NCBI RefSeq assembly: GCF_000142905.1
Contig: NW_013657667.1
Span: 130,801-194,800 of the forward strand
Length of the DNA stretch: 64,000 bases
Reading direction: 5' to 3'
DNA from: Thecamonas trahens ATCC 50062
Lineage: Eukaryota > Protista > Apusomonadida
Shown here one piece after another: positions 6,428 to 12,994 of the stretch; position 1 is the stretch's first letter; each line of letters opens with the position of its first letter. The position numbers and the translations under genes were made by a program. The notes beneath the pieces were generated by a model that worked only from the letters and a program-made list of their open reading frames with translations, had not been told where the DNA came from and did not search any database.

Positions 6428-7656
6428 TCAGAGGTTGGAGGAGGGCGTGGCGGTGACGACGGCGTGGATGGCGGCAGCGACGGCGTTGACGTTGGACGCG
6501 TTGAGGCCGGACATGGAGATGCGGCCCGAGTGGAGGAGGTAGACGTGGTGATCAGCCATGAGTGACTCGGCCTGGTCGCGGGTGAGGCCGGTGTAGGAGA
6601 ACATGCCAATCTGGTTGACGATATGCGACCAATCGCCGGGCGTGCCGGCGGCGACGAGGGCGTCGTGGAGGGCGTGGCGCATGGCGACGACGCGGGCAGA
6701 CATGGTCTTGAGGTCGGCAAGCCACTGGGTGGTGATCTCGGGAGTGGTGAGGAGGCGGGTGACAACGCTGGCAAAGTAGCGCGGCGGCGACGAGTACATG
6801 GGGCGGATGATGCCCTCGAGCTGAGTCATGAGCGCCGGGCGGGCGTCTGCAGCGTGGGTGAGGACGTGAGCAGCACCGACGCGCTCGCCATAGAGGCCGG
6901 CAGACTTTGCAAAGCTCTGAGCGACGACGAGGTCGATGCCGGCGGCGGCAAAGAGGCGGAGCGAGGCGGCGTCTGCGTCGGGATCGCCCGAGGCAAAGCC
7001 CTGGTAGGCGGCGTCGAACCAGGGGAAGAGGCCGCGCTCGAGGCAGACGTCGCGAATGGCCTCCCACTGGGTCATAGATGGGTCGACACCCGACGGGTTG
7101 TGGGCGCACATGTGGAGGAGAACGATGGCGCCTTCCGGGCGGCGCGGAGGTCTGCGAGCATGCCGTCGGCGTCGAGGCCGCGGGTGGCGGCATCAAAGTA
7201 GCGATAGGTGCGGATGTCTGCGTCCGGGTTCGTCCGCGACAGCACCTTGACATGGTTGCCCCACGTCGGGTCGGGGAGGTAGATCGGGGCGGCGGGGGCG
7301 AGGATCTTGAACAGCTCGGCGAGGACGCGCAGGGCGCCGGTGCCCGAGAGCGTCTGGACGGAGACAAGACTGTCGACGACGGGCGAGTCTGCGCCAAAGA
7401 TGAAGCGAGCAGCAGCAGCAGTAAAAGCAGTGTCACCGCGAATGGGAAGATACTCGTGGATGACCGTGTCGTCGGCAGCAGCTGCTGCCTTGGCCGCTGC
7501 CACTGACGGCAGGATCCACGGCTTGCCGTTCTCGTCGCGGTAGGCACCGATGACCAGGTTGGCCACTGGTGCAGGGTCGGCCTTGGCCCGAGCTGCAATA
7601 CCGTAGATGGAGTCTGCCGGAATGGGCTGCGCGTTGACGAGGTGAGATGATGCCAT
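6428..7656 (-). CDS. GOT1: Aspartate aminotransferase (class I, cytosolic type); one-base frameshift near 7137
   Basis: NLxIGAYRDENGKPWILPSV, QTLSGTGALR and PTWGNH in ORF 7072-7656; CAHNPSG, FDAAYQGFASGD, SFAKSAGLYGERVG (PLP lysine) and SGRISM in ORF 6428-7111. Adding one C in the gccc run restores LRAAPEGAIVLLHMCAHNP. Confidence 0.92.
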
Positions 7657-8374
7657 GCGTGCCAGGCGAGTGGGGGTACGGGGAGGGAGAGAGAGCGGTG
7701 GGTGCCGCTGTCGCGGTCGTGCGCCACGTGGCGGCGGCCCGGTGAGCTGGGGCAGCTGCGATAACTGGATAGGTTTGGGACAGGGTAAGGGGTGGGGGGA
7801 TGGGGGGGTTAGGGGGAGGGTATTTGCCTTTGGTAGTGTATGGGTAGCATGGGGTGGGGCGGTATGTGCAGTGGATGCGCTATCTGTGGTGATCTTTTCT
7901 CTAGCTACACATCGGAGTGACTCGGCCTGCGGCTTGTAGCACTCCCACAGGACGCACTACGGCTGCATCGCTGATGATGCAGCGTCTAGGGCCAGGTCAT
8001 GGACCACGCATCGGCCGATACGAAAGCGAGGACGGGGGGGGGGGGGGGGGGGGGGGGAGGGGGGAGGATCGGCCTGTGTGTAGAGGTCTTGTGCTGCTGC
8101 GGCACGCGAGCAGACGCACATCATTTGCAACGCGAAATCAAGGGCCAGGCCAGGTCATAGGCCAGGCATCGGCCGTGTGTCTTCTGTGCACCCGAGTGCG
8201 AGATCGGAGTCGTCGGAAGAGCTGGCGGCGAAAGTTGCGTCGGCGAATCGGCGGCAGCGGGCGGAGAGCGACCGTTGCGTGCGCACATGCGAGTTTGGAC
8301 GGCGGCCGGCAGGTGGAGGGACGAGACTGGGCAACACATCACTCGAACGACAGAGACGGGAACAAGGAGCAATC

Positions 8375-9100
8375 ATGGACGCCCTGAGGTCAGCAAAGAA
8401 GACAATGCGCAAGGCGACGCGTAAGGCGACGCGGTCTGTGCACGAGGCGCTGCACTCTGTCATCGATGAGGAGATGGACATCCAGAAGGCGCTCGAGCAT
8501 GTGGCCATGGAGCACGAGGACTCGTCGACGTATGTCTCGGCCTGGGCCGAGACCACGGGCGATGCCCAGATCATTTCCTTTGCATCGGCCCTGCAGCCGC
8601 TCTTCCGCAACCAAGTAGAGGCAGAGGGTGCACTGGCGGTGGCTCAGGGCGACTTTGTGGAGATGTGGAAGCGGCTCCTGGCCAAGGAGCGCGTCCGCGA
8701 CAACCTGCGCAAGACGCTCGACAAGAACCAGGCCAATGTCGACAAGCTGCAGACCAAGCTCGCGTCAGCGCCGGCTGCAAAGCGCGCTGCACTCGAGCAA
8801 AAGCTGGCGGAGGCGACTCAGCTCCGCGATGCCGCGCAGGCCGAGTACGAGCCGGTCGCCGCCGAGACTGCCGCCTTCACCCACGATCAGCTCGTCGCCG
8901 GCTACACTGCCTTCAATGCAGCCTACATTCAGTACCTGCAAACGTGCCTCAACGCCGCCAACGCCCGTTCCGACACCATCAACGCCTTTGCCGCTGGCAA
9001 TCCGCAGGGAGGAGGCGGTATCCGGGCCGCCGCCGCCGCCGCCATGGGCTCCGCTGCCGCGTACATGCCCAGCAACGGCGCACCGCCGGCCTACCAGTAG
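8375..9100 (+). CDS. Stand-alone BAR-domain protein, Pil1/Lsp1 (eisosome)-like, 241 aa
   Basis: All-helical three-helix BAR pattern. Segments such as LHSVIDEEMDIQKALEHVAMEHEDSSTYVSAWAE and KRAALEQKLAEA parallel the Pil1/Lsp1 core. Ends in a PPAY motif. Confidence 0.7.
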   Translation: MDALRSAKKTMRKATRKATRSVHEALHSVIDEEMDIQKALEHVAMEHEDSSTYVSAWAETTGDAQIISFASALQPLFRNQVEAEGALAVAQGDFVEMWKRLLAKERVRDNLRKTLDKNQANVDKLQTKLASAPAAKRAALEQKLAEATQLRDAAQAEYEPVAAETAAFTHDQLVAGYTAFNAAYIQYLQTCLNAANARSDTINAFAAGNPQGGGGIRAAAAAAMGSAAAYMPSNGAPPAYQ

Positions 9101-9109
9101 AAGATCGTT

Positions 9110-12100
9110 TTAAAGCGTAACGTCGATGTGCAGGCCGAGGTGCACACCCGACTCAAAAGCAAAAGTGATTTCGTTCGACGGCGGCGGCTCCAAGACCAGC
9201 TGCGAGAGGCCGAGGACGCCAAAGCCGAGCTCCTCGACTTCGTCGTTGGCGTCGGCGCAGACAAGTCGGACCAGCATGTCCGCCGGCCCCGGACACGCCA
9301 ATGCCAGTGGAATGTTGAGCGATTCTTCCCAAGCGCACGTGCCCGATGCATCGATGACAGCCTCGGCCGTGGCAGTCACTAGCTCGCCAAGCCGGACAAC
9401 TGTCACTGCGCGTCGGCTACAGAACCGCAGTGGGATTGCCGACGCGCCCTTGAACGCGATGTTGAGCGCCGACATCGCACTTGAAGACGACGACGACGAC
9501 GACGAAACCTCGTCCTCGATATGTGCTGCTGATGCTGAACACGCACTCGACACAAACGACATCTGGTAGCCGAGCGTGGCTGAGCCGGCCAGCATCGGGT
9601 CGCTGCTGCTTGTGCCGCTGGAAACGATCTGGTCAGACATGGCTTGGGATTCGGCGTCCGCTTGCCGTGCCTCGGCCTCTTGTTTGGACTCGGCCTGAAC
9701 TTTGGCCGGGGACTTGACCTCGGCTTTGTTCGCCTGCCACACATCAGCCTGCGGCTCGGTCTCGGCTTCGTCCGCCTGCCACACATCAGCCTGCGGCTCG
9801 GTCTCGACCTTGGCTTCGACCTCGGCTTCGTCCGCTCGCCGCACATCAGCCTGCGGCTCGGCCTCGACCTTGGCTTCGACCTCGGCTTCGTCCGCTCGCC
9901 GCACATCAGCCTGCGGCTCGGCCTCGACCTTGGCTTCGACCTCGGCTTCGTCCGCTCGCCGCACATCAGCCTGCGGCTCGGCCTCGACCTTGTCTGCCTG
10001 CCACACATCAGCCTGCGGCTCGGTCTCAGCTTCGTCCGCTCGCCACACATCAGCCTGCGGCTCGGTCTCGGCTTCGTCCGCTCGCCACACATCAGCCTGC
10101 GGCTCGGCCTCGACCTTGGCTTCGACCTCGGCTTCGTCCGCTCGCCACACATCAGCATGTGGCTCGGCCTCGGCTTTGTCTGCCTGCCACACATCAGCCT
10201 GCGGCTCGGTCTCAGCTTCGTCCGCTCGCCACACATCAGCCTGTGGCTCGGCCTCGGCTTTGTCTGCCTGCCACACATCAGCATGTGGCTCGGCCTCGGC
10301 TTTGTCTGCCTGCCACACATCAGCCTGTGGCTCGGTCTCAGCTTCGTCCGCTCGCCACACATCAGCCTGCGGCTCGGCCTCGACCTTGTCCGTCCGCCAC
10401 ACATCAGCCTGCGGCTCGGCCTCGGCTTCGTCCGCTCGCCACACATCAGCCTGCGGTTCGGTCTCGGCTTCGCCCGCCCGCCACACATCAGCCTGCGACT
10501 CGGTCTCAGCTTCGTCCGCCCGCCACACATCAGCCTGCGGCTCAGCCTCGGCTTCGTCCGCCCGCCACACATCAGCCTGCGGCTCGGCCTCGACCTTGTC
10601 CGCCCGCCACACATCAGCCTGCGGCTCGGCCTCGGCTTCGTTCGCCCGCCACACATCAGCCTGCGGCTCATCCTCGGCAGCATGCGAGTCAATATCTGAC
10701 CGCCATACGGTTCCACTCCTCTCACCAGACTCACTTCCACTCTCGCTGACCACCGAGAGGTCCGAGCCCAGGCCACGGCCGGCATTCCGCTGAGCAACCT
10801 CCATCCACGACGCCGGCCTAGACAGCACCCCGCTCCCAACTGCTCTCGCATCCGCATCCGCATCCACGTCCGCTTTGGCCACCAGCGCGAGATTCGACGA
10901 GCTTTGTCCAAGTTGCGGTGCTTGCCGCGCCCACTTCTCCTGGTACTGCCGCCGCGACTCGGCGAGCTCTCTCCGACGCTCTTCCACAGAGCGCCGGAAG
11001 CCTGAAAACCGCCCCGCGAGTGGGTGCAGATCGGCAGGCTCAGCATTATCGGCCCGTCCATCGAGGGCAGACCCGCTCCCGCTCGCCCCCGCTGTGCTGC
11101 CGCCACGACAACTGCTCGCCCCTGAGCGCTCGTCGTCGTGATAGCGGCTCGCCACAAACGAGTGCAGCCCCGCAGAGCTCCCAGAACCGGCGCCGTGGCC
11201 CTCGCTTGGCGGTGAGAGCAGCGATTCGCGGCGGATGATCGGCTTGGCCTTTGACGAGGAGGAGCTCTTGGTCTTGGACTTCTTGTTCTTCTTCTTGGTC
11301 GTCTTCTTCTTGCGGACTCGCCGAACCCGCCGCCGCCGCTTCAGCTGCCGCTGCAAACGAACTGCATCCGGGATCTGCGAGAGCGATGCCTCAGTCACCC
11401 GCGAGGTGTCGATGCCCGGCGCCCTGGACGTCACCTGCGTTGTGCGCCGCCCCACAGACGGCGCCTCGCTCCCCTCCAATCGCAATGGGTCCAGCTGCTC
11501 TCCGTGCCGCCAGCGGTAGCCGGGCTTGATTCGAAGCCGCCCAGTCCTCCGGCTGCGGCCTCCTGGCGGCCGCGCAGCAGGCGGCCGCGGCACAACCGGC
11601 TCCTGACTGGGGGCGCCAAGCTCGTTCCCTACCCCTGCAGGCTCAATGACCGCAACTGCCGCTGCCACCGGAGGCACCTTGGGTAGCCGCCGGGCCGTGC
11701 GCACACTTGGTGCCGCCACCTCGCTGCTAGGCTTTCCAAACGCTGCATCAAGCATCGCCCGAAAGTACACCATGTCTTCGGTCACGCCCATGCTCGCAGC
11801 CACTGCGTCCGACCCATACGCCGTCTGCAGCGACGTAAGCGCAGACGCCGGTCCGGGCACAGGCTTCACTGCCTCGGCACGCTCGCGCTTGTAGAACTGC
11901 GGCTGAAGCTCCGGATCGTCGGCGAGGCATAAGACATCGCCAGGCGTCGATGCCACCGCCCGCCGGACTCGCGACGGCCGCGACCGAGCCGAGCACCCCG
12001 TCACCCGTCGCTCCTTGAGCTTGGGAAACATGTACGCCTTCCACAGCGCTGCATGCATGGCCCGCAGCGAGGTCGCCCCGTCGAGCGCCTCCTCCGGCGC

Positions 12101-12994
12101 CTGGGTGCCCATCACGCCCGAGAGCCCAATCCGCACCGCACCGCCGCTGCCGTCGACAAGATCAACCCAGCCCTCCCACTCCTTGACCAGCACTTGCGGC
12201 CAGACGGATGCCATCGGAATCGCCGCCCAGCCCAACTCCAGGTCGTCATCGCCTTGCCGGCTCGCAAAGACTATGACATGCAGAAACTCGGTGTCAAGGT
12301 TGATCTCGGGTGTCAGCGCGACCCGCGACACCGCCTGCCACACAGGGCTCGGATCCGCCGGGGACGTCTCAGTCCGTGCTGCGACCGACCCGAGGCCGAG
12401 CACCACATACACTCCGTCGCTGCCGCGGGCCATCGCGCTCAGGCCCCGTGCCCGCAGGACCCGGACAACCAGCTCGTCTGGACGCGATATGTCACCGCCT
12501 GACTCGCTACTGTCACCATCGGGCCTACTGTCGCTATCTTTGCGCTGCGGCGTCGTCGGTGGTGACTCGCCCAGCAGCGCCGCTCGCGACAGCGTCCACC
12601 GCCGCCCGCGCTGCCGCACCGACATCGACTCGATTCCGACGTTGCTTGCCAGCATGGCGAGAAGATCAGCGTCAGCCCGCGCCGCCGAGGCTGTCACATC
12701 CAGCACTAGATGCCGCACAGAGGTGTTGACATGGAGCGCCGCGAGCGTGCGCGCATAAAGACCGTACGGCACGCCGGCGAGCACAACAATCGCCACCGCC
12801 GTGTTGAACGCAAGCGCATCGGCCACCGCCACCGCATACGACACTTCCCACGCCAGAAGCTCGCCCATGTCTACATACGTAAGCCGCCTGTCCGAGTTCT
12901 GCACAGCGCGCAGCACCAGCGGAGGCTGACTCACCCGCCGTCCATCCTCCCTACCTGCCGCCGCAAACAGCGGGGCCAGTTGCGCCACACCCAT
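9110..12994 (-). CDS. C2-domain protein with N-terminal RI-like LRRs, central disordered region, acidic tandem repeat and second degenerate C-terminal C2
   Basis: LVVRVLRARGL..YVVLGLG..ARTE..PVW..LHVIVF..DDLELGWAAIP is a C2 pattern. ADALAFNTAV/AALHVNTSVRHL/AMLASNVGI are LRR-like. 1294-aa ORF. Confidence 0.7.
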   Translation of the reverse strand: MGVAQLAPLFAAAGREDGRRVSQPPLVLRAVQNSDRRLTYVDMGELLAWEVSYAVAVADALAFNTAVAIVVLAGVPYGLYARTLAALHVNTSVRHLVLDVTASAARADADLLAMLASNVGIESMSVRQRGRRWTLSRAALLGESPPTTPQRKDSDSRPDGDSSESGGDISRPDELVVRVLRARGLSAMARGSDGVYVVLGLGSVAARTETSPADPSPVWQAVSRVALTPEINLDTEFLHVIVFASRQGDDDLELGWAAIPMASVWPQVLVKEWEGWVDLVDGSGGAVRIGLSGVMGTQAPEEALDGATSLRAMHAALWKAYMFPKLKERRVTGCSARSRPSRVRRAVASTPGDVLCLADDPELQPQFYKRERAEAVKPVPGPASALTSLQTAYGSDAVAASMGVTEDMVYFRAMLDAAFGKPSSEVAAPSVRTARRLPKVPPVAAAVAVIEPAGVGNELGAPSQEPVVPRPPAARPPGGRSRRTGRLRIKPGYRWRHGEQLDPLRLEGSEAPSVGRRTTQVTSRAPGIDTSRVTEASLSQIPDAVRLQRQLKRRRRVRRVRKKKTTKKKNKKSKTKSSSSSKAKPIIRRESLLSPPSEGHGAGSGSSAGLHSFVASRYHDDERSGASSCRGGSTAGASGSGSALDGRADNAEPADLHPLAGRFSGFRRSVEERRRELAESRRQYQEKWARQAPQLGQSSSNLALVAKADVDADADARAVGSGVLSRPASWMEVAQRNAGRGLGSDLSVVSESGSESGERSGTVWRSDIDSHAAEDEPQADVWRANEAEAEPQADVWRADKVEAEPQADVWRADEAEAEPQADVWRADEAETESQADVWRAGEAETEPQADVWRADEAEAEPQADVWRTDKVEAEPQADVWRADEAETEPQADVWQADKAEAEPHADVWQADKAEAEPQADVWRADEAETEPQADVWQADKAEAEPHADVWRADEAEVEAKVEAEPQADVWRADEAETEPQADVWRADEAETEPQADVWQADKVEAEPQADVRRADEAEVEAKVEAEPQADVRRADEAEVEAKVEAEPQADVRRADEAEVEAKVETEPQADVWQADEAETEPQADVWQANKAEVKSPAKVQAESKQEAEARQADAESQAMSDQIVSSGTSSSDPMLAGSATLGYQMSFVSSACSASAAHIEDEVSSSSSSSSSAMSALNIAFKGASAIPLRFCSRRAVTVVRLGELVTATAEAVIDASGTCAWEESLNIPLALACPGPADMLVRLVCADANDEVEELGFGVLGLSQLVLEPPPSNEITFAFESGVHLGLHIDVTL
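9718..10670. repeat. Coding minisatellite, 21 units of 42 bp (four extended to 60 bp), encoding EPQADVWRADEAEA
   Basis: Repeating ccacacatcagcctgcggctcgg core; units counted from the translation. Confidence 0.95.

What the first reader, a model, noticed from the sequence alone, without database searches (positions are those of the whole stretch)
8375..9100. Pil1/Lsp1-like eisosome BAR protein in a non-fungal flagellate
Seen: a 241-aa stand-alone helical protein. By eye it aligns nearly gap-free with the yeast Pil1/Lsp1 core as I recall it: LHSVIDEEMDIQKALEHVAMEHEDSSTYVSAWAE vs LSQLVKIEKNVLRSMELTANERRDAAKQLSIWGL; KRLLAKERVRDNLRKTLDKNQANVDKLQTK vs KSIRDIEGSVQPSRDRKDKITDKIAYLKYK; KRAALEQKLAEA vs KIEVLEQELVRA. 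The S-x-W of helix 1 is kept. Established: Pil1/Lsp1 build eisosome membrane furrows and are regarded as a fungal family. Inference: a homolog in a ciliated, non-fungal protist would push the scaffold back before the fungi and suggest an undescribed cortical membrane-furrow system. The basic N-terminus (KKTMRKATRKATR) could bind PI(4,5)P2, and the terminal PPAY is a WW/Nedd4-binding motif.
Basis: partly seen in the sequence, partly recalled or inferred. Interest (0 to 1): 0.85.

Follow-up and report, generated by a model that had tools for sequence, protein, structure and literature searches.

The report
Pil1/Lsp1-like BAR protein in Thecamonas
A small gene of the marine flagellate Thecamonas trahens encodes a membrane-curving BAR protein whose closest known relatives are the yeast eisosome scaffolds Pil1/Lsp1, a family the literature searched treats as fungus-specific, but it lacks several parts that yeast Pil1 needs to build eisosome furrows.

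Summary
Window 8375-9100(+) is an intact, single-exon 241-aa ORF. It is covered by metatranscriptome contigs and predicted to be three long helices.

The Pil1/Lsp1 affinity also holds, though only weakly for the single sequence. Pfam Pil1 is its top hit but falls under threshold. A profile of the whole family is clearer:
- It hits only Lsp1/Pil1 among all PDB sequences (E 5e-6 to 4e-3), and no other BAR family at E<=10.
- hhalign against 13 fungal Pil1 proteins gives 95% probability (P 4e-8). Reversed and shuffled controls give P>=0.03.
- Foldseek ranks Lsp1/Pil1 first for models of two paralogue types.

The assembly is Thecamonas trahens, an apusomonad, not a fungus. It holds four paralogues, and three of them carry a C-terminal SH3 domain.

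The eisosome reading is not supported:
- Pil1's N-terminal amphipathic and lattice segment is absent.
- Two of the three PI(4,5)P2-pocket arginines are lost.
- No Sur7 is found.
- The Pfam cut-off is not met.

My reading is a sister family of the Pil1 BAR domain. It probably acts as a dimeric, polybasic membrane binder, with a conserved C-terminal PPxY that could recruit WW/Nedd4-type proteins.

Three unchecked first-reader notes of this scan (s1-746529, s1-751914, s1-756926) flag Pil1/Lsp1-like BAR-SH3 genes elsewhere in this genome.

The parts
8375..9100 (+). Complete single-exon CDS, 241 aa plus stop: the stand-alone member of an apusomonad Pil1/Lsp1-like BAR family
8375..8443 (+). Residues 1-23: polybasic N-terminal segment (8 K/R, net +7, moderate hydrophobic moment 0.46). 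It stands where Pil1 has its 55-residue N-terminal amphipathic-helix and lattice segment.
8444..8995 (+). Residues 24-207: BAR core aligned to Pil1 residues about 56-229
   Evidence: hhalign; PDB profile hits; Foldseek
8378..8557 (+). Helix 1 (residues 2-61), ending in the S-x-W motif
8543..8545 (+). W57 codon. The residue is invariant in all 10 family rows and aligned to the invariant Pil1 tryptophan (W89, yeast numbering).
8564..8764 (+). Helix 2 (residues 64-130). It carries K99 (aligned to Pil1 K130), K117 (aligned to K148) and the conserved ER-x-RD motif.
8774..8995 (+). Helix 3 (residues 134-207). It starts with K136 and E141 of the KR-x-x-LEQ-x-L motif, aligned to Pil1 K165 and E170.
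8996..9097 (+). Residues 208-241: Gly/Ala-rich tail predicted with low confidence
9083..9094 (+). PPAY (residues 237-240), a PPxY motif conserved at the C-terminus of all four stand-alone orthologues

Best explanation
The gene encodes the stand-alone member of a small BAR-domain family so far seen only in Thecamonas and uncultured marine relatives. The three-helix core of this family is homologous to, and among known families closest to, the fungal eisosome scaffolds Pil1/Lsp1. It is a sister or outlying family, not an orthodox Pil1.

Inferred mechanism: two chains pair through the three long helices into a crescent. The crescent binds acidic membranes through the polybasic N-terminal segment (net +7) and basic residues of helices 1 and 2 (K38, K99, K117, K136). 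The flexible tail presents a conserved terminal PPxY that can recruit WW-domain proteins such as the Nedd4-type WW-HECT ligases encoded in the genome. The three SH3-bearing paralogues, one type of which also carries NPF motifs, would couple the same membrane module to endocytic or actin machinery.

Shown here: the ORF, its coverage by RNA-library contigs, the predicted fold, the homology ranking, motif conservation, and the presence of candidate partners in the genome. Inferred only: dimerisation, lipid binding, WW binding and cellular role.
For: Sequence and profile evidence:
- Pfam Pil1 is the top hit for this protein (E 1.9e-4) and for orthologue P0004 (E 2.6e-4). No other BAR family appears for the window protein even at E<=10.
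- The Pfam Pil1 model searched over the whole 28.7-Mb assembly hits only this gene (E 8.7e-4). The Pfam BAR model hits two other genes, not this one.
- Family profiles A2 and A4 against 177,635 PDB sequences give Lsp1 at E 5.2e-6 and 4.6e-5, and Pil1 at about 2e-3 to 4e-3. The next hits are unrelated coils, and no amphiphysin, endophilin, arfaptin, SNX, APPL or FAM92 chain appears at E<=10.
- hhalign of the family against 13 fungal Pil1 ORFs gives 92.6% and 95.0% probability (P 4.7e-7 and 3.9e-8) over 173 columns spanning the whole BAR core.
- Controls: reversed, column-shuffled and block-shuffled alignments give P>=0.03. The family profile against the two canonical Thecamonas BAR proteins gives P 0.017 and 0.46.

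Structure evidence:
- Foldseek places Lsp1/Pil1 at ranks 1-4 for this protein (E 6e-5; 16-18% identity, among the highest in the list). For the paralogue-type model P0012, Lsp1 takes ranks 1-3 at 2.7-3.3 A rmsd.

Residue conservation:
- Family-conserved residues coincide with Pil1-conserved ones: W57/W89, K136/K165, E141/E170, A147/A176 and K38/R70.
- PPxY is conserved in four orthologues of 47-55% identity within an otherwise unconserved tail.

Genome context:
- 77 WW matches, and WW plus HECT in the same open frame on C9, C30 and C57.
- RNA-library contigs cover the gene.
Against: - The single sequence is below the Pfam gathering score (21.5 against 27 bits), and three of five relatives give no Pil1 hit on their own.
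- The first, shallower profile gave Lsp1 only E 0.19, beside endophilin-B1 at 0.3.
- The geometry-only aligner ties all BAR families at Z 12-15, with FAM92A and arfaptin nominally ahead of Lsp1. For P0012, Foldseek puts FAM92A, SNX and arfaptin within a factor of five of Lsp1.
- My narrow fungal Pil1 profile A3 found nothing in the genome.
- BAR plus SH3 is the architecture of amphiphysin, Rvs167 and endophilin, not of Pil1.
- Pocket residues R126, R133 and K66 are not conserved.
Confidence: 0.75

Rival explanations
1. It is a true eisosome-type scaffold. Like Pil1, it polymerises into a lattice on PI(4,5)P2-rich plasma membrane and builds stable cortical furrows in Thecamonas.
For: Pil1/Lsp1 is the closest known family. 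The N-terminus is basic. K99 aligns with Pil1 K130 and K38 with R70.
Against: There is no counterpart of Pil1 residues 1-55, which hold the amphipathic helix and the sterol-contact residues F33/Y40/F42/F50 plus R43 (PMC11324527). R126 aligns with V95 and R133 with L102. No Sur7 was found (best E 0.048, under cut-off). A 2026 paper, citing Lee et al. 2015, reports that among microalgae eisosomes are seen only in walled cells (PMC13353863). From my own knowledge, Thecamonas is not walled.
Confidence: 0.12
2. It is a divergent member of another BAR lineage (N-BAR amphiphysin/endophilin/Rvs type, FAM92/CIBAR, arfaptin or SNX-BAR), and the Pil1 signal is a side effect of shared helical composition.
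For: Three paralogues have the BAR-SH3 layout. VIA-align puts FAM92A (Z 14.8) and arfaptin (Z 14.4) nominally first. Paralogue L006 gives a weak Vps5 hit (E 0.005) and P0004 a weak BAR_3_WASP_bdg hit (E 0.024). Atlas feature hits mix FAM92, BAR and Pil1, all below 0.9 for named clusters.
Against: No other BAR family appears in the PDB profile searches at E<=10, while Lsp1/Pil1 reach 5e-6. The Pfam BAR model does not hit this gene in the genome search. Shuffled and reversed controls rule out composition as the cause. The alignment is full-length and shares invariant residues.
Confidence: 0.12
3. The gene was acquired from a fungus by horizontal transfer, or the contig is fungal contamination.
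For: The family is otherwise regarded as fungal (PMC3128537; bioRxiv 10.1101/2023.08.25.554800).
Against: Identity to Pil1/Lsp1 is only 16-18%. Four diverged paralogues sit on four contigs of the assembly, two of them named Thecamonas trahens by NCBI. Orthologues of two paralogue types occur together in one marine metagenome sample. GC content and neighbouring genes match the rest of the window.
Confidence: 0.03

Closest known systems
Pil1/Lsp1 (Pfam PF13805; PDB 3PLT, 8QB7, 8QB8), the eisosome core BAR proteins of fungi
   Same: Three-helix BAR core, alignable end to end over 173 columns. Shared invariant tryptophan of the S-x-W-G/A motif followed by an acidic stretch. Shared K-x-x-x-LEQ-x-L start of helix 3. 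A basic residue at the R70 position, and in this protein also at K130. Best match by profile and by Foldseek.
   Different: About 16-18% identity, and below the Pfam cut-off. Lacks Pil1's first 55 residues (lattice contact, amphipathic helix, sterol-contact aromatics). Lacks R126, R133 and K66. Lacks the conserved post-BAR region, which is replaced by a Gly/Ala tail ending in PPxY. Three paralogues carry SH3 domains, which I did not find described for Pil1-family proteins in the papers read. The host is an apusomonad with no detectable Sur7.
Rvs161/Rvs167, amphiphysin and endophilin (Pfam BAR PF03114): a BAR-only protein alongside BAR-SH3 proteins
   Same: The family has one stand-alone BAR and three BAR-SH3 members, echoing the Rvs161 (BAR only) and Rvs167 (BAR-SH3) pair. 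All have a basic N-terminal segment before helix 1.
   Different: The PF03114 model does not hit this family, and Thecamonas has separate canonical BAR genes. No N-BAR chain appears in the PDB profile searches. hhalign to the Thecamonas N-BAR protein gives only P 0.017.
FAM92/CIBAR BAR domain (PDB 9UHD, 8CEG)
   Same: Stand-alone BAR of about 200 residues. Highest geometric Z-score (14.8, 206 residues aligned) and rank 4 in Foldseek for P0012.
   Different: 11% identity. No Pfam FAM92 hit and no PDB sequence-profile hit.
Syndapin/PACSIN (F-BAR, NPF, SH3)
   Same: Paralogues P0005 and P0009 combine a BAR-type domain, NPF motifs and a C-terminal SH3.
   Different: The membrane domain here is a short classical or Pil1-like BAR, not an F-BAR. 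F-BAR chains align poorly (TM about 0.3).

Membership tests
Pil1/Lsp1 (PF13805) | Score at or above the Pfam gathering threshold (27 bits) | tested here: not met
   21.5 bits, E 1.9e-4, top hit. P0004 scores 21.1 bits. The genome-wide search gives 22.3 bits.
Pil1/Lsp1 (PF13805) | Full-length homology of the BAR core to Pil1/Lsp1, above other BAR families | tested here: met
   hhalign 95% probability, P 3.9e-8, 173 columns. Controls give P>=0.03. PDB profile search: Lsp1 at E 5e-6 and Pil1 at about 2e-3, with no other BAR family.
Pil1/Lsp1 (PF13805) | Three-helix BAR fold most similar to the Lsp1/Pil1 structures | tested here: inconclusive
   Foldseek ranks 1-4 are Lsp1/Pil1 and ranks 1-3 for paralogue-type P0012. 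VIA-align ties all BAR families at Z 12-15: Lsp1 13.8 at rmsd 2.9 against FAM92A 14.8.
Pil1/Lsp1 (PF13805) | PI(4,5)P2 pocket R126/K130/R133 (PMC11324527) | tested here: not met
   These residues align to V95, K99 and L102. Within the family, the K99 column reads K/Q/R/A/E.
Pil1/Lsp1 (PF13805) | Phosphatidylserine-coordinating K66/R70 | tested here: inconclusive
   K66 aligns to M34, which is variable. R70 aligns to K38, which is lysine in every row that covers it.
Pil1/Lsp1 (PF13805) | N-terminal segment with amphipathic helix and sterol-contact aromatics (F33, Y40, F42, R43, F50) and lattice contacts | tested here: not met
   The hhalign match starts at Pil1 residue 56-57. Only 23 polybasic residues precede it here, and none of the aromatic positions has a counterpart.
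Pil1/Lsp1 (PF13805) | Dimerisation and helical lattice or tubule formation on membranes | not testable with these tools
No coordinates were accessible for surface analysis.
MCC/eisosome system | Co-occurring Sur7-family tetraspan protein | tested here: not met
   PF06687 best match E 0.048, 17.1 bits, under the cut-off.
Classical BAR / N-BAR (PF03114) | Match to the Pfam BAR model | tested here: not met
   The genome search at E<=0.01 finds only C4 and C19 genes. PF03114 is absent.
FAM92/CIBAR (PF06730) | Match to the Pfam FAM92 model or to FAM92A sequences | tested here: not met
   Absent, and from the PDB profile searches. Only geometric similarity was found.
SNX-BAR / Vps5 (PF09325) | PX domain plus Vps5-type BAR | tested here: not met
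   No PX domain. Only paralogue L006 gives a weak partial Vps5 hit (E 0.005, 16.8 bits).

The most novel reading that the evidence does not exclude
The eisosome-type BAR domain predates fungi. It was present in the common ancestor of apusomonads and opisthokonts as a BAR(-NPF)-SH3 endocytic protein family. Fungi kept and elaborated a stand-alone form into Pil1/Lsp1. The Thecamonas stand-alone form still assembles a cortical membrane-shaping coat in a flagellate without a fungal-type cell wall, controlled through its PPxY tail by Nedd4-type ligases.
Probability: 0.12. Interest if true: 0.85.

Novelty: new variant of a known kind. Interest (0 to 1): 0.6.

Why it matters
Papers in the held library call eisosomes fungus-specific, and report significant Pil1/Lsp1 BLAST hits as mostly restricted to fungi (PMC3128537; bioRxiv 10.1101/2023.08.25.554800; PMC11371571). 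No held paper mentions both Pil1 and Thecamonas.

A sister family in apusomonads, the closest relatives of opisthokonts, has three consequences:
- It gives the Pil1 BAR domain an outgroup.
- It suggests the scaffold descends from an older BAR family that is still fused to SH3 domains and NPF motifs.
- It offers a natural minimal Pil1-like core, without the N-terminal lattice segment, for asking which parts of Pil1 make a lattice rather than an ordinary BAR coat.

It is an evolutionary and structural lead, not evidence for eisosomes outside fungi.

Tried and rejected
- Single-sequence phmmer against PDB found nothing relevant.
- The first shallow profile A1 against PDB was not significant: Lsp1 E 0.19, endophilin-B1 0.3. 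Significance came only after adding the Thecamonas paralogues.
- The exhaustive phmmer over 1.8 billion representatives, and two word-indexed profile searches, found only about ten family members and no fungal Pil1. The family looks restricted, but the exhaustive search used a single-sequence query only.
- VIA-align did not discriminate among BAR families.
- Atlas hits were all leads below or at 0.9.
- My narrow fungal Pil1 profile A3 found nothing in the genome.
- Lee et al. 2015 (PMC4588622), the main paper on eisosome evolution, is not held. Its content is cited only through other papers.
- The look-up of encoding contigs had no record for P0005.
- A coiled-coil artefact was rejected on the shuffle controls. 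Fungal contamination or recent transfer was rejected on low identity and the multi-contig paralogy.
- Exons of the spliced paralogues were used separately by reference (L005:1510-2130, L006:1501-1995, L007:1573-2097, L129:241-810). No exon joining was done.

Full report
**1. Observation**

The window has about 64% GC with long open frames. ORF 8375-9100(+) encodes 241 residues plus a stop.

The frame stays open upstream to a GTG at 8177. The ATG at 8375 is still the real start, for two reasons:
- Orthologues P0002 and P0006, and exon 1 of a marine-metagenome orthologue (L130:1227-1445), begin with the same MDALRS/MDTLRA motif.
- Contigs from RNA libraries of three studies lie colinear on 8269-8974, at 99% identity or more, without joints. 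These are contigs, so they show presence in RNA libraries, not expression level.

AlphaFold2 with the family alignment gives pLDDT 84. It predicts three long helices (2-61, 64-130, 134-207) and a low-confidence tail. The description "241-aa stand-alone helical protein" is correct.

**2. Organism**

Earlier notes of this scan name the genome Thecamonas trahens. I confirmed this independently. Two paralogues returned by the protein database carry the NCBI names AMSG_06188 and AMSG_01384 of T. trahens ATCC 50062. They map to contigs C26 and C5 of the window's own assembly, and P0005 is 99.5% identical to L005. The host is therefore an apusomonad flagellate, not a fungus.

**3. The family**

An exhaustive HMMER scan of 1.8 billion representative proteins found only five real relatives. 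Word-indexed profile searches added a few more.

A profile search of the Thecamonas assembly finds four paralogues:
- this gene, on C13
- C26 (AMSG_06188)
- C5 (AMSG_01384)
- C75

The other three end in an SH3 domain. AMSG_06188 and its relative P0009 also carry NPF motifs.

Orthologues of the stand-alone type (P0003) and of an SH3 type (P0011) occur in the same marine metagenome sample. The duplication therefore predates the split of these organisms.

**4. Is it Pil1/Lsp1-like?**

Taken alone, the sequence gives a suggestive but sub-threshold signal:
- Pfam Pil1 is the top hit (E 1.9e-4, 21.5 bits against a cut-off of 27), with no other BAR family listed.
- Orthologue P0004 behaves the same way.
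- The Pfam Pil1 model run over the whole 28.7-Mb genome in six frames hits only this gene (E 8.7e-4).
- The Pfam BAR model hits two other genes and not this one.

To test the signal properly I needed real Pil1 sequences.
- A degenerate DNA pattern for the Pil1 IR-x-IE-x-SVQPSRDRK motif, taken from the Lsp1 sequence printed, recovered at least 120 metagenome loci.
- 37 of these hold full-length MHRTYS-type Pil1 ORFs.
- 13 of them, each under 85% identical to the others, form alignment A3.

hhalign of the apusomonad family against A3 gave:

| Family alignment | Probability | P-value | Coverage |
|---|---|---|---|
| A2 (8 rows) | 92.6% | 4.7e-7 | 173 columns |
| A4 (10 rows) | 95.0% | 3.9e-8 | 173 columns; residues 24-203 here against Pil1 57-229 |

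Controls:

| Comparison | Best P |
|---|---|
| Reversed alignments | 0.078 and 0.14 |
| 30 column shuffles | 0.084 |
| 30 seven-column block shuffles | 0.034 |
| Family against the two canonical Thecamonas BAR proteins | 0.017 and 0.46 |

The same family profiles were searched against all 177,635 distinct PDB sequences. Only Lsp1 (E 5.2e-6 and 4.6e-5) and Pil1 (about 2e-3 to 4e-3) rank ahead of unrelated coils. No amphiphysin, endophilin, arfaptin, SNX, APPL or FAM92 chain appears at E<=10.

Structure searches agree, but less sharply:
- Foldseek ranks Lsp1/Pil1 at places 1-4 for this protein.
- For an independent model of the AMSG_01384-type paralogue P0012 (pLDDT 89), Lsp1 takes places 1-3 (TM 0.70-0.71, rmsd 2.7-3.3 A) and Pil1 place 5.
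- The geometry-only aligner cannot separate BAR families (Z 12-15), and FAM92A is nominally first.

Structure therefore proves "BAR domain". The Pil1 specificity rests on sequence profiles.

**5. Residue-level comparison (yeast Pil1 numbering from ORF L099)**

| Window residue | Pil1 residue | Note |
|---|---|---|
| W57 | W89 | invariant on both sides |
| K136 | K165 | conserved on both sides |
| E141 | E170 | conserved on both sides |
| A147 | A176 | conserved on both sides |
| K38 | R70 | conserved on both sides |
| K99 | K130 | aligned, but variable within the family |
| V95 | R126 | Pil1 residue not kept |
| L102 | R133 | Pil1 residue not kept |
| M34 | K66 | Pil1 residue not kept |

R126, R133 and K66 are part of the lipid pocket defined by cryo-EM and mutagenesis (PMC11324527; K130E/R133E in PMC3257569).

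Nothing here corresponds to Pil1 residues 1-55. That segment contains the amphipathic helix, R43 and the sterol-contact aromatics. Instead there are 23 residues with net charge +7 and a moderate hydrophobic moment. A polybasic start is shared by all paralogues.

The alignment around residues 104-130 is ambiguous: two hhalign runs place the gap differently.

**6. Tail**

The Gly/Ala-rich tail is unconserved except for its end. That end reads PPAY here, PPAY in P0002 and P0003, and PPEY in P0004.

The genome has 77 WW-domain matches. At least three open frames combine WW repeats with a HECT domain, on C9, C30 and C57. Nedd4-type readers of PPxY therefore exist. Binding itself is inferred, not shown.

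**7. Eisosome system?**

No Sur7-family gene is detectable. The lattice and amphipathic segment and most of the PI(4,5)P2 triad are missing. I therefore do not file the protein as a Pil1-family member or as evidence for eisosomes. I file it as a sister family of the Pil1 BAR domain.

**8. Literature**

- Eisosomes are described as fungus-specific.
- In 2011, Pil1/Lsp1 homologues were reported as most significant in fungi, indeed only in Dikarya.
- A 2026 paper says that eisosome-like furrows occur in walled algae and names other BAR genes as candidates (citing Lee et al. 2015, which I could not read).
- No held paper mentions both Pil1 and Thecamonas.
- Database records list no Pfam BAR or Pil1 domain for these proteins: none for the window protein and only SH3 families for the two NCBI-named paralogues, which are called "uncharacterized" or "SH3 domain-containing".
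- Three first-reader notes of this scan (s1-746529, s1-751914, s1-756926), unchecked, flag Pil1/Lsp1-like BAR-SH3 genes elsewhere in this genome, presumably the SH3 paralogues. My family-level tests support that reading.

**9. Verdict**

- The specific kinship to Pil1/Lsp1 is well supported, at about 0.8 in my estimate.
- The "undescribed furrow system" is unsupported, at about 0.1.
- The best mechanistic reading is a dimeric BAR membrane binder with a polybasic N-terminus and a PPxY recruitment tail. It belongs to a family whose other members couple the same module to SH3 and NPF partners.

Noticed in passing
window 9110-12994 (-): A 1294-aa ORF with a Pfam C2 domain (residues 174-273) and a long, very regular coding repeat of the (E)PQADVWRADEAEAE type in its middle. 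An earlier first-reader note (s1-758999) describes the same minisatellite.
   Followed up: partly
window 6428-7656 (-): A class I/II aminotransferase is split into two overlapping ORFs (7072-7656 holds profile positions 3-142; 6428-7111 holds 154-361). This looks like a short intron or a frameshift near 7072-7111.
   Followed up: partly
Atlas cluster (no id): An unannotated arthropod protein cluster ('uncharacterized protein isoform X3', 302 aa, 176 members, no Pfam family) is the top language-model hit for both this protein (0.90) and paralogue AMSG_01384 (0.87). It is also the first structural row for the latter (TM 0.77). It may be an animal relative of the family, but no sequence could be retrieved to test this.
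   Followed up: no
G000:C26 (L005), G000:C5 (L006), G000:C75 (L007): Three Thecamonas paralogues join the Pil1-like BAR core to a C-terminal SH3 domain. AMSG_06188 and its relative P0009 also carry several NPF motifs in the linker, a syndapin-like layout built on a different BAR type.
   Followed up: partly
P0012 model, residues 105-107: In the AMSG_01384-type paralogue, helix 2 is broken at a conserved Asp-Pro. This is roughly where Pil1 has its conserved S-V-Q-P-S-R-D-R-K segment. The stand-alone protein has no proline there and a continuous helix.
   Followed up: no
A3 (fungal Pil1) columns after helix 3, against window 9083-9094: Fungal Pil1 has an invariant R-P-A-Y-D-G-Y shortly after the last BAR helix. 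The apusomonad stand-alone proteins have P-P-A/E-Y shortly after theirs (9-12 residues in P0002 and P0004). This could be chance, or a shared post-BAR motif rather than a WW ligand.
   Followed up: no
P0004 residues 32-56; L130:1227-1470: Orthologue P0004 has a 25-residue Cys-rich insert that looks like an unspliced intron in a contig-based gene call. The marine orthologue on L130 has an intron after about residue 51. The Thecamonas gene has no intron.
   Followed up: partly
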